Source: Salpingoeca rosetta
Lineage: Eukaryota; Protista; Choanoflagellata
NCBI GenBank assembly: GCA_033442325.1
Contig: JAWQFM010000017.1
Coordinates: forward strand, 741,639 to 805,638
DNA length: 64,000 nt
Reading direction: 5' to 3'
Part shown: piece after piece, positions 2,044 to 8,000 of the stretch
Numbering within the stretch: the stretch's first letter is position 1
Layout: each line of letters begins with the position of its first letter
The notes under the pieces: generated by a model
Database searches by the model: none
What the model was told of the DNA's origin: nothing
What the model saw: only the letters and a program-made list of their open reading frames with translations
Program-made: the position numbers and the translations under genes

Positions 2044-5000
2044 TCACCTGCTGCCAAATCCTGCAGCAACCTGCAGCAAGTTGCTCAGTTTCGAGTCAAG
2101 GTCTGTGTGAGCTGTAATGAGCTCCTGCTCGCGCAAGCGCAGCACCACATCCTCTTGCACCGATGCCGACACCCCAACCACGTCCACACCGTTCAGCAGC
2201 ACACGCGGGCTTGCAGCAGCATCATCCGCAGCAGCATCGGCATCGGCATTGCCCTCGGCGTCACCAGTGCAGAACCGCACGTTGCCAAACCGGTCCACGC
2301 GCGCCCGCGCCGTTGCTCGCGCCCTTTCATACGCAAGGGAATTCCCACCTGATGCCGGCGGGGGTGACGTGAGGGGCGAGCACCCGGTGCCTTCAGCGAC
2401 GCCACCGCCGTCGGGGATGGCATCGAGCACTGGCAGGAGCGGGACAGCAGCGGTTGCACGCGGGCCCTCCCCAACGGAGGTCGCGGCTGAGACGAGGACG
2501 AGCGGCGTGAGGACATTGGTCAGCAGGTGAGATCGGTCCTCCCCAGAGGGTGTCTCCGCCCACAGCCACACACCACCCAACCTGAATTGTGTGTGCGCGC
2601 ATGTGTGTGTGTGTGCGAGTGAGTGTGTGTGTGCGAGTGAGTGAGTGTGTGTGTGTGTGTGTGGGTGTGGGTGGGTGGGTGTGTGAGTGAGTGAGTGGGT
2701 GAGTGGGTGAGTGTGGGAGTGAGTGTGTGTATGTGTGAGTGTGGGAGTGAGTGTGTGTGTATGTGTGAGTGGAGTGGAGTGGAGTGGAGTGGAGTGGAGT
2801 GGAGTGGAGTGGAGTGCCATGAATAAAACAACACAAAAACTAAACCAAAACACACCCTGAGTGACTCGTTGTGTGTGTGTGTGTATTGCAGCCATCACAA
2901 ACTGCAAGAACACGTACTCTGCGTAGTAGATGACATAGCGGAGGACGACGCCATTGGGGTCTTCGGGTGGCTGCCAATGCACACGAACACCACCCACCTG
3001 CTCCTGGCTGCTCTCCCGCACCAGTTGCACATTGGACGGTGGACCGGGGATGGCCTCCGCGGTCTTCACCGTCGTGTTGCGCATATCCGCCGATGCACCC
3101 GCCTGGTTGACGGCTCGGACGTAGATGGTGTACGTGGTGAACGGCCGCAGCCGCCGCAACGTCACCGTGCGCGTGTCTATATCTGTGGCAACAGCGTCGC
3201 TCAAACCATCGGCTGCAACATACACAACCTTGCAACAGAGGCCAGCAAGGGGGAGAGGCAGAGAGAGGGGGCAGGGGCCATGTGTGGACAGACGAGCAGT
3301 GTTGTTCATTTGTGAATCGGCATTTGTTGTTGTGTATGGCACGTGCATTCTGGAATGTTGTGCTCTGTGTGTGTGTGTGTGTGTGTGTGTGTGTGTGTGT
3401 GTGTGTGTGTGTGTGTGTGTGTGTGTGTGTGTGTGTGTGTTAAAGTGTGGGCGCACGCGCAATTGTCCATGGGCGCAGGTGAAAGGGTGCCTCGCTTTCA
3501 GCCAGCGCATCAGCGCGGAGACCAACCTTGTATCCTGTGAGTTCGCCGTTGACAGTTGAAGGCGGCGGTTCATGCCAGGACAGGGTGATGGTCGTGTTTG
3601 TGACATCGTCCACAACAACCTCGGTTGCGTCCTGGCTCGGCGGTCCCACGCGCGTCATCCCCTGAAGCGCAGCACTCCACGGCCCGCTGCCAACACTCGT
3701 GTATGCCCGCACCCGCACATCGTACGCTCGCGAAGGGTGCAGGCCGTCGATTGTCAGCGCAGTGGTGGTGGCAAAGTGGGGCGTGCCCGTGCAGACGCCA
3801 CCACGGCACACGTCGCCGCCGGTGCTTGCATCATCGTCGTCACAGGGCAGGCCGTCTGCAACGGGCGTGGACACACACGCACCGTGGGAACAGTAGCTGG
3901 AGAGCAGACACGGCGACTGTGGGCACTGCACATCTGCGCAGGGGTCAGCCACCTCCTCCGTCATGGCAAACACCTCGAGCGCATCCACGTCAAACGACGA
4001 CGACCCGGCAAGCCACGTGTCCGTGTACTCCCCAGCCCCAACGTTGTGGGCGATGTGGAACGCAGACGCCGTTGCTGTGCCGTTCATGCACCCGGGCCCA
4101 AACGCCAAATCAGGGCCGTCACCTGGAGGCGGAGGTGGAAGCGTGGAAGTGTGGAAGCGCAGAAGCAAATGTGAGACACGCGCTCGCATTGCAAGTTGAA
4201 AAAAGCAAATGCGCACAAGCAGCACTCACGTACACTCGCAGATTACATAGATAGACGGATACATACATACATACATACATACATACATACATACATACAT
4301 ACATACATACATACATACATACATACATACATACATACATACACACATGCATACACACATACACACATGCATACACACATACATACATACATACATACAT
4401 ACATACATACATACATACATACATACATACATACATACATACATACATACATACATACATACATACATACACACATACATACATACATACATACATACAT
4501 ACATACATACATACATACATACATACATACATACATACATACATACATACATACATACATACATACATACAGCGGCATGTGCTCGAACCGAAAGAGGGGC
4601 AGGGAAAGTCGCGCAAGGTGACAGCGCAGGAAGGGGCAGTCACGTCCTCATCCGTTCTGTACACGCGCCCGTTGTGGATGGTGAAGAGAAACGCACGCGT
4701 GTCGCGATGACAGCCGTACGTCTGCGGCCACACGGTGTTCGCAAAGCCGCCAAACACACGCCCGCTTGTTGCCCGCACCACAACAACAGCCGGACCTGTG
4801 TTGGCGCACGTGCTGAGGAAGGACACAGCAAACCCTTCTGTCGCAGAAGCAGAATAGCAGCGCGTGAACACACGGCCTGGCAGCAGCAGCGAGAGCTGCT
4901 CGTTCTCGCTTTGCGTGAGCACCGATGAGCCCGACAGCAGAGGTGGATTGCCGTCGGCGGCGGGCGTGTACACGTTTCCGGACAGAAGGGGGAAGCAGCG

Positions 5001-8000
5001 GAGAGGCACAGACTCTGCGCTGAAGCAGAGGTCGCGGCCATTAAACACGGTGTTGAAGGGCACGAAGCCAATGTTGAAGGCGATGGCGGCACGCTCACCC
5101 GTCACCACGTCAAAGCTGCAGTTGAACAGAGGAGAGAAAAGAGGCGGGCATGTCGGTGGTGGTGGTGGTGGTGATGATGATGGTGATGCCAGAGGTGGTG
5201 AGAGTGGTGATGGAGAATGTGCAGGGTCCGTAGGTGAGTGGATTGTGTGTGTGGGATGTTGTTTGAAATGGAAATTGAACGGACAATACCGAGCCGGCAC
5301 GCAGCTGGAGCACCGCGATGTGATGTGACATCTGTCAAAAAACAGAAGCCAAACCACCCAGGCGTTCTGCCATTCCCAAACACACACACACCCACACACA
5401 CATGGAGATGCACACGATACATGCACACGCACACATGCACACATGCACACACACACACACACACATGGACATGCACACAATACATACACACGCACACTGA
5501 CCTGATGACCGTGGCCGCGGAGATGCGGAAGATGATGCCGTGGGTGGCAGCGAGGCCTTTGCACGACAGCGACAAGGTGTTGGAGGCCGAGTCCACGAGG
5601 GTCAGCGAAGACATTGACGATCCATCAATCGCACTCAGGACGAAGAGCGTGTCTCCAAGCTCCGTCGCTGCGTACACGAGGCCGTCGTGCTGCGTCACGC
5701 CAGCGAGATCCCCGTCTCCGACTGCGGCTTGCCATGCCATGGCACCCGTTGGCTCATGATACTTCAGCACGCTGGTCTCATTGACGAGGTAGATGTGCTC
5801 GCTGTGTGCGTCGGCCCACAACTGGCGGACGTTGGTGACGGGCACGGAGTGGGCTGAGTCGATGGCACTGCCATCCGCGCTGTAGCGCAGCACGGATGTT
5901 GACGCGAATGGCACAAACCTGCAGCGGACACGAAACAGTGGGGTATCGGGGTCGTGAGATGGCGTGTGAGGGAAGCCGTTGCCCCGCTTCGAAAATAATT
6001 ACGACAATGACTTGTTGACATTTCTCAATATACACGCTCCGAAGCGGAAACACACACACACACACACAAAGCAAACAAACAAACAAACAAACAAACAAAC
6101 AAACACACACACACACACAAACAAACAAACAAACAAACACACACACACACACAAACAAACAAACAAACAAACAAACAAACACACACACACACACAAACAA
6201 ACAAACACAGACACACAGACACACAAACAAACAAACAAACAAACAAACAAGCGCAGATACACATACACATACACACATAAGCCCCCTTCCCCACCAACAA
6301 CAAAACAAACACACCAGTACTGGTTGAGCCAGGGAAGGAAGCCTGCAGCGGCATTGCCGGTGTCGGTGACAATGAGAGAATACGATTGGGCGGTGTCCTT
6401 GAGCAGCTGCGGCGCAGAGGCCTCTGGCCAGATGGTGTGCGTGACAACCTGGCAGTGGGACACATATGCACAATAAGGTGATCATGGATGAATGTCATGT
6501 GCAAGCAACAGAGAAAAGGACAGCGTGATTATCATCGCAGTGTTGAAGGATTCTATCGCAAGAGCAGGTGCATATCAGACAAGCCGGCAACAACTGACAT
6601 GGGGAAAAAAAAGAGTCCAATACCCACACCCTCCAATGGAGCCACCCACAATCACCACTCCCCTCCCCCTCAATTGCCGCCCCCCCCCCCCACCCACACA
6701 CACATTACCTGGTAGCAGTAGATGTTGTTGTTGTTGTCGCTGAGGCAGAGGTCGCGCCCCGTGAACGCGGACGAGTACATGCGCTCAATGGGCACGTCAA
6801 TCCTAAACCCGTCAAAGGCGCCGTTGCTGAGGTTGTGGCGGTAGATGCGGTTGCCTGTGCCGTAGTACAGCTTGTCCTTCACCACGGCAAACACCCCGTG
6901 TAGATCACCAATCTCCCCGCCCGTCAGGTCAAACGTGTGGTTGCGCGTGCCAGTGTCCTTGTTGACCACGTGCACCGTTGCTCGCGATGTCTGGATGCAG
7001 TACGCAAACGCGGCGTCTGTGGCCACACCGCCAACGGGGCGCGAGGGCTGCGGCGTGTATGTCCACACAACGGCGCTGGTCGGGAACGGGCCAAGCTTGC
7101 GGCAGTGGTTGGAGAAGCTTGCCGTGTAGTAGTACAGCGAGTCTGGCTCGCCCCACACCTGCTTCATTTCCCGCGTGTTGTCTGGCGTGTCAAACGACCC
7201 TAAGAAGCGCCCGTCACCGGTCAGGCGGTCGATCCTGGCCACTGCCCAATACGGGTACCACCACTCCCCAAGCCGCGGCATGTACCCTGCGCCGTAGCTC
7301 TGCTGGTCGTGGCTCAGGTGGCGCGGGACGGGGACGACTGTTGCGTGCGCACCGTACACTTCTCCGACACAATGGCCATCGACGCACCTGTCGCCAATCG
7401 TGTCTGCTCTGCCGTCATCGCACAGCGTGGTGTCTGGCAGCGCCGTGTACATGCACGCCCCAAAGGCGCACCACGTCTCGCCCTGGCACTGTGCGGGCGG
7501 CGCGCAGGCGACTGCGATGCACGAAGCGTCCTGACCCGCGCTGGGCACCGCCTGCACACCATAGCCGACAATGTCGCCGTTGGTGCCAGGGGTGGCTGTA
7601 TCCAGCGCATCCCACGAGACTGCCAGCGTTGTTGCCGACCGGTTATCCAGGCGAAGCCCAGTGGGCGCAATGGAGGGTACGCTTGCGCGCGTGGTGATGA
7701 CAGCGAGCCCGGAATCGTCGTTGCGGTCGCCGCCACGCCCGATAGAGTACACGCGGACGAGGTACTGCGTGGCGGGGGTGAGGCCGGTGATGGTCGCCTC
7801 AAACCGCTGGTCCGTGGGCTGCGAACTGTCCCACGTGACCTGCACGCGCGTGGAAATGATGTCGCTCGTTGTAGTGCTCTCTGGGTTTGGAATGGCGTCA
7901 ATGTCAAAGGCCTGCAGCGGCGTGTTGGCCACCCACAGGCCCGCCGGTGCCGTCCACTGCACAGTGACCTGGTCGGCGATGGGCGGAAACTCGATCCGCT

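What the first reader, a model, noticed from the sequence alone, without database searches (positions are those of the whole stretch)
3660..7680. One FN3 domain split by a ~750-800 aa nested cassette (Cys module, propeller x2, TLDc, Cys module)
Seen: the FN3 starting [37 protein letters not shown] (~7680-7545; strands A-C) has no second half next to it. An orphan second half, [32 protein letters not shown] (strands E-G), appears only at ~3770-3660. Between them lies a cassette bounded by two homologous Cys modules: [49 protein letters not shown] and [48 protein letters not shown]. Inference: a multi-domain head was inserted into the C-C' loop region and projects sideways from an FN3 rod, with the Cys modules as out-and-back stalks. 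I know of no described protein with this architecture.
Basis: partly seen in the sequence, partly recalled or inferred. Interest (0 to 1): 0.75.

Follow-up and report, generated by a model that had tools for sequence, protein, structure and literature searches.

The report
Folded domain cassette nested inside FN3
A choanoflagellate (Salpingoeca rosetta) surface-type protein has one small fibronectin type III domain cut in two by a 743-residue block of five folded domains; this layout recurs in paralogs and other species but does not appear in any paper I searched.

Summary
The window's minus-strand gene is PTSG_06573 of Salpingoeca rosetta (1434 aa, annotated "hypothetical"). Pfam fn3 matches profile positions 2-39 at 7525-7677 and positions 48-82 at 3665-3772. 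Both junctions with the flanking Cys modules lie inside uninterrupted reading frames.

Between the halves lie 743 residues: Cys module, five-bladed propeller, linker, second five-bladed propeller, complete TLDc domain, Cys module. All seven introns of the gene model are GT..AG.

The string FN3n-Cys-prop(1-2)-TLDc-Cys-FN3c occurs nine times in five proteins. These include a transcript-derived 4500-aa ORF of Microstomoeca roanoka (three copies, with signal peptide and TM helix) and an adhesion-GPCR paralog. It also occurs on an unrelated 40%-GC environmental contig. The halves are conserved at least as well as the neighbouring intact FN3s.

The nested insertion is therefore well supported at sequence level. 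I could not test whether the halves pack into one beta-sandwich, or whether the Cys modules act as a stalk.

The scan already noted the same layout on paralogous DNA of this genome (s1-438663, s1-433431, s1-433361). I rate it a new variant of a known kind (domain insertion), of moderate interest.

The parts
2047..8903 (-). Gene PTSG_06573 (P0001, 1434 aa). Exons: 8903-8814, 8400-6709, 6445-6313, 5916-5504, 5117-4586, 4119-3524, 3225-2917, 2580-2047.
   Evidence: P0001 maps at 94-100% identity to these pieces. Exact exon walk with GT..AG at every intron. Name and accessions.
7689..8400 (-). Two intact FN3 domains (P0001 31-140 and 172-257) preceding the split one.
   Evidence: Pfam fn3. Local FN3 HMM, 64.0 and 43.4 bits.
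7525..7677 (-). FN3 N-half (P0001 272-322): strands A, B (conserved Trp) and C (GY motif).
   Evidence: Pfam fn3 profile 2-39/84, 19.3 bits. Local HMM 1-49/99, 31.5 bits. hmmalign picture.
7363..7521 (-). Cys module 1 (8 Cys, P0001 324-376).
   Evidence: Weak DUF7107/EB-like Pfam hits. Homologous to Cys2. AF2 pLDDT 85-92, two beta-hairpins.
6709..7335 (-). Five-bladed beta-propeller 1 (P0001 about 386-595).
   Evidence: AF2 pLDDT 93-98, 20 strands. Foldseek top hits are plant/bacterial-type glutaminyl cyclases 3mbr, 3nol, 2iwa, TM 0.64-0.70 on the target.
6313..6445 (-). Mini-exon (44 aa) linking the two propellers.
   Evidence: Part of P0001. It resolves the apparent phase clash between exon 8400-6709 and exon 5916-5504.
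5504..5916 (-). Propeller 2, main part.
   Evidence: Local prop HMM and blastp repeats. The homologous region of P0022 folds as a 5-bladed propeller, pLDDT 85-97.
4961..5117 (-). Propeller 2, last blade.
   Evidence: The end of the 8400-6709 exon aligns to the start of this exon. Local prop HMM positions 161-207 sit at the equivalent place in L033.
4586..4934 (-). TLDc domain, first part.
   Evidence: PF07534 profile 3-107/170, E 3.5e-12.
3965..4119 (-). TLDc domain, last part.
   Evidence: In the spliced database protein, PF07534 covers profile 3-168/170 over residues 839-1006, 55.9 bits.
3785..3940 (-). Cys module 2 (P0001 1015-1066).
   Evidence: Weak DUF7107/EB hits. Local cys HMM. Conserved in all paralogs.
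3665..3772 (-). FN3 C-half (P0001 1071-1106): strands E, F (Tyr corner) and G.
   Evidence: Pfam fn3 profile 48-82/84, 32.8 bits. Local HMM 61-96/99. PDB FN3 chains align in register.
2047..3655 (-). Two further FN3 domains (P0001 1115-1206 and 1216-1301), each split by an intron in or just after strand C, followed by the C-terminal tail.

Best explanation
This is one gene (PTSG_06573) for a secreted or surface protein built as a rod of FN3 domains. Its third FN3 is interrupted after strand C, at the C-C'/C'-E region. The interrupting block is 743 residues: Cys module, five-bladed propeller, linker, five-bladed propeller, TLDc, Cys module. Most likely the two FN3 halves (A-B-C and E-F-G) come together as one beta-sandwich. 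The rod then stays continuous and the cassette hangs off it as a lateral, probably ligand-binding, head. Shown here: the linear architecture, its conservation, the five-bladed propeller fold by prediction, and the extracellular context of relatives. Inferred: that the halves reassemble in cis, the lateral geometry, and the binding role.
For: The Pfam fn3 matches of the two halves are complementary: profile 2-39 and 48-82. A local HMM gives 1-49 and 61-96, and the two bit scores sum to about 62, within the range of intact neighbours at 43-81. Each conserved core position (Trp in B, Tyr in C, Leu in E, Tyr in F) is present exactly once across the pair, in 8 aligned pairs. Both junctions lie inside open reading frames here and in 6 paralogous loci. 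The gene model has canonical GT..AG introns throughout. The Microstomoeca roanoka protein P0002 has a TransDecoder-style 'type:complete' header, so no intron modelling is involved. It carries the whole unit three times, collinear with P0001 over about 960 aa. The Logan contig L033 (40% GC) has the same order. The JGI contig L027/P0022 reads from propeller 1 to the FN3 C-half without any intron. The halves are as conserved as intact FN3s, or more so: 39/39% against 27-36% versus Microstomoeca, and 55/53% against 37-48% versus PTSG_09826. No AG dinucleotide lies in window 3740-3808 on the minus strand, so no canonical acceptor could splice directly onto the C-half. The N-half alone is predicted with low confidence (pLDDT 56-69) next to confident Cys1 and propeller, as expected of an incomplete domain. 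Extracellular context: P0002 has a signal peptide and a C-terminal TM helix. In P0008 the cassette lies N-terminal of GPS and 7tm_2.
Against: No structure of a chain containing both halves was predicted or found, so packing is inferred. The C' strand is not recognisable (HMM positions about 47-60 are missing). Only about 8 residues lie between Cys2 and strand E. The re-entry geometry is therefore uncertain: the two ends of the insert could sit at opposite poles. No RNA-seq of S. rosetta was available here. P0001 itself has no TM helix, and its poly-Leu N-terminus comes from a CTG repeat, so its own localisation rests on relatives. The function of the head is unknown. TLDc is otherwise known from cytosolic V-ATPase binders (PMC8608904).
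Confidence: 0.75

Rival explanations
1. The architecture is real, but the halves do not reassemble in cis. Instead they pair in trans with halves of another chain (or of another cassette in multi-cassette relatives), giving domain-swapped oligomers. Alternatively, each half packs on the adjacent Cys module.
For: Packing in cis was not tested. C' is missing, so the geometry is unusual. Relatives carry 2-3 cassettes per chain, which would allow inter-cassette pairing.
Against: Every cassette has exactly one N-half and one C-half at its own borders, including the single-cassette proteins P0001 and P0008. Known domain insertions generally keep the host domain intact (general knowledge; PMC13114784 abstract).
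Confidence: 0.13
2. The cassette is optional, or an artefact of the gene model. Alternative splicing or separate genes would give an uninterrupted FN3 rod and a separate head protein.
For: No S. rosetta transcript data could be consulted here. The gene has seven introns, and the cassette spans five exons.
Against: Both junctions are inside exons in all paralogs. There is no AG acceptor near the C-half junction. A transcript-derived Microstomoeca ORF contains three complete units. P0022 reads through from the propeller to the FN3 C-half in one ORF.
Confidence: 0.05
3. The half-FN3s are decaying relics of a domain destroyed by the insertion. They now serve only as linkers.
For: The N-half alone scores below the Pfam cut-off (19.3 against 25 bits) and is predicted with low confidence.
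Against: The halves are conserved at least as well as intact FN3s across paralogs and species. They keep all core residues.
Confidence: 0.04

Closest known systems
Insulin receptor / IGF1R FnIII-2 with its insert domain (ID)
   Same: An FN3 domain of a cell-surface receptor ectodomain is interrupted by a long insert and still counts as one FN3 (PMC2577065). From my own knowledge, the insert lies in the C-C' loop, the same region as here.
   Different: The ID is about 120 residues, largely disordered, and carries the furin cleavage site and the alphaCT ligand-binding segment. Here the insert is 743 residues of five folded domains, and no cleavage site was identified.
Integrin beta subunit: betaI domain inserted in the hybrid domain, itself inserted in the PSI domain (own knowledge, not tested here)
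   Same: A small beta-sandwich in a stalk is split in sequence by a ligand-binding head domain, so the head is displayed off the stalk.
   Different: The host and insert families differ. The integrin insert is a single domain (a VWA-like fold), not two propellers plus TLDc flanked by Cys modules.
TLDc domain proteins (OXR1, NCOA7, TBC1D24, TLDC2, mEAK-7)
   Same: Full-length Pfam TLD match: profile 3-168/170, 55.9 bits.
   Different: Known TLDc proteins are cytosolic V-ATPase interactors (PMC8608904, PMC9263379). Here the domain sits among disulfide-rich modules and FN3s on the extracellular side of TM/7TM relatives.
Plant/bacterial-type glutaminyl cyclase (five-bladed beta-propeller; PDB 3mbr, 3nol, 2iwa)
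   Same: It is the best structural match of propeller 1: TM 0.64-0.70 normalised by target, rmsd about 3.7 Å over about 240 columns.
   Different: Only 10-15% identity, and no Pfam Glu_cyclase_2 hit. The same propeller family occurs in tandem (up to 11 copies) in a giant bacterial surface-type protein. A binding scaffold is therefore more likely than an enzyme.
Adhesion GPCRs with multidomain ectodomains in choanoflagellates (PMC12716839)
   Same: Paralog PTSG_09376 (P0008) carries the same nested cassette upstream of GPS and 7tm_2.
   Different: The window's gene has no GPS or 7TM, and no 7tm_2 match lies on this part of contig C17. The paper lists FN3 and PQQ among aGPCR ectodomain domains but mentions neither TLDc nor nesting.

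Membership tests
Fibronectin type III (PF00041) | The sequence matches the fn3 profile over its length. | tested here: met
   The two halves together cover profile 2-39 and 48-82 of 84. The N-half alone is below the cut-off (19.3 against 25 bits); the C-half alone is above it (32.8). Local HMM coordinates are 1-49 and 61-96 of 99.
Fibronectin type III (PF00041) | Seven-strand beta-sandwich formed by one contiguous fold unit. | not tested
   No reference of 1200 aa or less holds both halves. Both prediction jobs went to the pieces.
Nested (inserted) domain architecture | The host domain is discontinuous in sequence, with the guest domains wholly between its two parts on one polypeptide. | tested here: met
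   Exon map of P0001. Open frames across both junctions. Transcript-derived P0002 with three units.
Nested (inserted) domain architecture | The N- and C-termini of the insert are close in space, and the host domain is intact in 3D. | not tested
   This needs a full-cassette model or an experimental structure.
TLDc (PF07534) | Full-length profile match above the gathering score. | tested here: met
   P0001 residues 839-1006, profile 3-168/170, 55.9 bits against a 24.5 cut-off. P0022: 90.3 bits.
TLDc (PF07534) | Cytosolic V-ATPase-binding role, as in characterised members. | not testable with these tools
   The context argues for an extracellular location. The AF2 model of the TLDc region was poor (pLDDT 25-47).
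Glutaminyl cyclase, plant/bacterial type (PF05096) | Sequence membership in the family. | tested here: not met
   No Pfam hit even at E up to 10. There is fold similarity only.
Adhesion GPCR | GAIN/GPS motif plus a secretin-type 7TM domain. | tested here: not met
   Both are absent from P0001, and no 7tm_2 match lies near the window on C17. They are present in paralog P0008.

The most novel reading that the evidence does not exclude
The split FN3 could be a functional latch rather than a passive mount. The rod's load path runs through a sandwich whose two halves are joined only by sheet packing. Tension on the rod (for instance in the adhesion-GPCR paralog) could then pull the halves apart and put the propeller-TLDc head in series or expose it, coupling force to ligand binding. 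A related possibility is that the head was taken from bacterial giant adhesins and dropped by exon shuffling into the intron that ordinary FN3 repeats of this gene carry in or just after strand C. That would give TLDc a new extracellular binding role.
Probability: 0.1. Interest if true: 0.8.

Novelty: new variant of a known kind. Interest (0 to 1): 0.55.

Why it matters
Domain insertion is common, but the host here is a roughly 90-residue FN3 carrying a 743-residue, five-domain folded guest. The unit is reused up to three times per chain and is conserved across species. It shows how the closest relatives of animals build side-branched receptor ectodomains from animal-type adhesion modules. It places a TLDc domain, known only from cytosolic V-ATPase regulators, in an extracellular setting. 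It also gives a natural test case for how much an FN3 loop can carry, which bears on protein engineering on FN3 scaffolds. S. rosetta is genetically tractable, so the family, including an adhesion-GPCR member, can be tested directly.

Tried and rejected
(1) Folding the whole cassette. No natural reference of 1200 aa or less contains both halves: P0001 is 1434 aa, and P0004, P0008, P0163 and P0002 are longer. The second, shorter cassettes of the paralogs are broken by many introns.

(2) A scan of JGI metagenome contigs with P0022, looking for an intron-free full cassette, found no relative.

(3) The search for homologous proteins on P0001 residues 260-1120 returned only P0001, P0004 and P0163, because the word candidates were saturated.

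(4) The apparent phase clash between the donor at 6709 and the acceptor at about 5916 looked like a broken model. It is resolved by the 6445-6313 mini-exon of the annotated protein.

(5) AF2 of P0022 gave a confident second propeller but a poor TLDc, so no head arrangement can be stated.

(6) Is the window gene an adhesion GPCR? No: there is no 7tm_2 match near it.

(7) Is the published S. rosetta aGPCR Cupidon this family? No: it is PTSG_03655, with a ConA-like domain.

(8) Exon shuffling exactly at an FN3 intron. Introns of the ordinary repeats lie 5-12 residues upstream of the cassette junction, not at it. I keep this only as a weak idea.
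Full report
WHAT IS THERE. The region lies in a GC-rich, intron-rich eukaryotic gene on the minus strand, with microsatellite-filled introns. A search of 1.84 billion representative proteins with window:6723-7689:- returned P0001 as the top hit. P0001 maps back to the window at 94-100% identity in eight pieces. It is PTSG_06573 of Salpingoeca rosetta (XP_004991958.1, UniRef F2UG73, 1434 aa), named only "hypothetical protein" or "Fibronectin type-III domain-containing protein".

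An exact exon walk gives these exons: 8903-8814, 8400-6709, 6445-6313, 5916-5504, 5117-4586, 4119-3524, 3225-2917 and 2580-2047. Every intron is GT..AG. It removes an apparent phase clash between the two propeller exons.

THE OBSERVATION.
- Pfam fn3 matches profile 2-39/84 in window:7507-7689:- (19.3 bits) and profile 48-82/84 in window:3641-3778:- (32.8 bits).
- A local FN3 HMM, built from the intact repeats of this protein family, gives 1-49/99 (31.5 bits) and 61-96/99 (30.4 bits). Intact neighbours score 43-81 bits.
- PDB FN3 chains align to the C-half as residues about 60-100 of a 103-residue domain.
- The N-half runs into Cys module 1 inside ORF 6673-8601, and Cys module 2 runs into the C-half inside ORF 3443-4225. 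Neither junction therefore depends on a splice model.
- The insert is residues 324-1066, 743 aa.

THE CASSETTE.
- Cys modules. Each has 8 Cys and is homologous to the other. Pfam gives only weak DUF7107/EB-like hits. The same module forms arrays of 30-87 copies in proteins of Diaphanoeca grandis and Diplonema ambulator.
- Propeller 1. AlphaFold2 of window:6709-7689:-, with a 35-row alignment, gives pLDDT 93-98 and 20 strands, i.e. five blades. Foldseek ranks plant/bacterial-type glutaminyl cyclases first: 3mbr, 3nol and 2iwa, with TM 0.64-0.70 on the target. Identity is only 10-15%, and there is no Pfam membership.
- Propeller 2. It is a diverged repeat of the same unit. In the homolog P0022 it folds as a second five-bladed propeller, pLDDT 85-97.
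- TLDc. It is complete in the spliced protein: PF07534 profile 3-168/170, 55.9 bits. Its AF2 model in P0022 was poor.

IS IT ONE POLYPEPTIDE, AND IS IT CONSERVED? A six-frame search of the window's own genome finds seven loci with junction 1 and seven with junction 2. They are paired 3-4 kb apart on contigs C17, C34, C30, C3, C14, C35 and C31. In the six paralogous loci junction 1 is always an open frame, and junction 2 is an open frame in five. In L025 the Cys2 module is split by about 100 nt, but Cys2 still reads into the C-half.

Domain strings from local HMMs show FN3n-cys-prop(1-2)-tldc-cys-FN3c nine times in five proteins:
- PTSG_06573: one copy.
- PTSG_13098: two copies (in the first copy only a weak remnant of the C-half is detected and no Cys2).
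- PTSG_09826: two copies.
- PTSG_09376: one copy.
- P0002 of Microstomoeca roanoka: three copies.

P0002 carries a TransDecoder-style "type:complete" header from EukProt. It is therefore a transcript-derived ORF with no intron modelling. It is collinear with PTSG_06573 residues 228-1196 in a single 38%-identity alignment.

Two environmental contigs add independent organisms. L033 (Logan SRR14727191, 40% GC) has the full order with introns. L027/P0022 (JGI 3300040743) reads from propeller 1 through TLDc and Cys2 into the FN3 C-half and the next FN3 in one ORF. That ORF ends at a GT exactly where S. rosetta has its intron after the strand-C GY motif.

The halves are conserved at least as well as intact neighbours, and each core residue occurs once per pair. 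No AG dinucleotide lies in window 3740-3808 on the minus strand, so a canonical acceptor that would splice straight onto the C-half is absent.

WHAT WAS NOT DONE. I could not run it. Structure prediction takes at most 1200 residues by reference, and every natural protein holding both halves is longer. The paralogs' shorter cassettes are intron-rich, and a metagenome scan for an intron-free copy found nothing. That covers joined halves on the Pfam HMM and a joined or trimmed model for folding. The complementary partial matches of the separate halves stand in for the joined Pfam test.

One indirect observation bears on this. The N-half on its own is predicted with low confidence (pLDDT 56-69), beside confident Cys1 and propeller.

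HOW IT MOST LIKELY WORKS. Relatives place the cassette outside the cell. P0002 has a signal peptide and a C-terminal TM helix. PTSG_09376 has GPS plus 7tm_2 downstream of the cassette, i.e. it is an adhesion GPCR. The window's own protein has a poly-Leu N-terminus, no TM helix and no nearby 7TM. It is therefore probably secreted, or anchored by other means.

I infer that strands A-B-C and E-F-G reunite as one FN3, so the rod is continuous and the two-propeller/TLDc head is displayed from its side as a binding module. About 8 residues between Cys2 and strand E could supply a short C' strand.

The same propeller family occurs 11 times in tandem in a giant protein (P0003). P0003 lies on a contig whose neighbours are typical bacterial genes: MerR, PRPP synthetase and pseudouridine synthase. 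This suits an adhesive or binding role and hints at a bacterial source for the head.

COMPARISON WITH WHAT IS KNOWN. The closest precedent in FN3 is the insulin-receptor FnIII-2 insert domain, which is about 120 residues and disordered (PMC2577065). The closest in principle is the integrin beta hybrid domain split by the betaI domain (own knowledge). Domain insertion is frequent in general: 20% of multidomain proteins, according to the PMC13114784 abstract.

I found no paper naming these four PTSG genes. None describes a folded multi-domain insert in FN3, and none describes TLDc in choanoflagellate ectodomains. TLDc is otherwise characterised as a cytosolic V-ATPase-binding domain (PMC8608904).

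EARLIER SCAN NOTES. Three earlier notes of this scan (s1-438663, s1-433431, s1-433361) describe the same layout on paralogous DNA of this genome. I reached the paralogs independently and treat those notes as agreement, not as evidence.

VERDICT. The nested-insertion reading is well supported at the level of sequence, gene structure and comparison. The 3D claims remain open. I rate it a new variant of a known kind, with interest 0.55.

Noticed in passing
window 3524/3225 and 2917/2580 (minus strand); L033:4688-4929 and 5201-5355: The ordinary FN3 repeats downstream of the cassette are each split by an intron in or just after strand C. That is 5-12 residues upstream of the point where the cassette interrupts the split FN3. 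The same pattern occurs on the 40%-GC environmental contig. It is a possible trace of exon shuffling into an intradomain intron.
   Followed up: partly
L034:3-12020 (P0003, JGI 3300047570): A 4005-aa protein holds 11 tandem copies of the same five-bladed propeller plus Big_9/cadherin-like repeats, on a contig with typical bacterial neighbours. Other 5-6 kaa metagenome proteins (P0006, P0011) combine the propeller with TLDc. The head modules may have a bacterial origin.
   Followed up: partly
P0008 = PTSG_09376, locus L023 (G000:C3:2332000-2341000): This paralog carries the nested cassette in the ectodomain of an adhesion GPCR (GPS motif at 1473-1519, 7tm_2 at 1532-1768).
   Followed up: partly
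window 8814-8903 and 8400 (minus strand); P0004 N-terminus: A basic RxRR-type motif directly precedes the first FN3 in both PTSG_06573 and PTSG_13098, which could be a furin-like processing site. The predicted signal peptide of PTSG_06573 is a poly-Leu run encoded by a CTG repeat.
   Followed up: no
L025, L026, L028-L032 (G000 contigs C35, C31, C14, C34, C30): Five paralogs share long stretches above 90% protein identity, pointing to recent duplication or gene conversion. The window's gene and the C3 gene are the divergent members.
   Followed up: partly
window 4230-4570, 5330-5480, 5990-6300, 8440-8600: The introns of this gene are filled with microsatellites: (TACA/TGTA)n, (CA)n, and a CAAA-rich repeat interspersed with CA runs. 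These create long spurious low-complexity ORFs on both strands.
   Followed up: no
P0016, P0017, P0019 (Diaphanoeca grandis and Diplonema ambulator transcript ORFs): The 8-Cys module that flanks the cassette forms tandem arrays of 30-87 copies in giant proteins of another choanoflagellate and of a diplonemid.
   Followed up: no
window 26670-29864, 33361-37143, 52808-54715 (minus strand): Three long open frames (1065, 1261 and 636 aa) elsewhere in the window were not examined.
   Followed up: no
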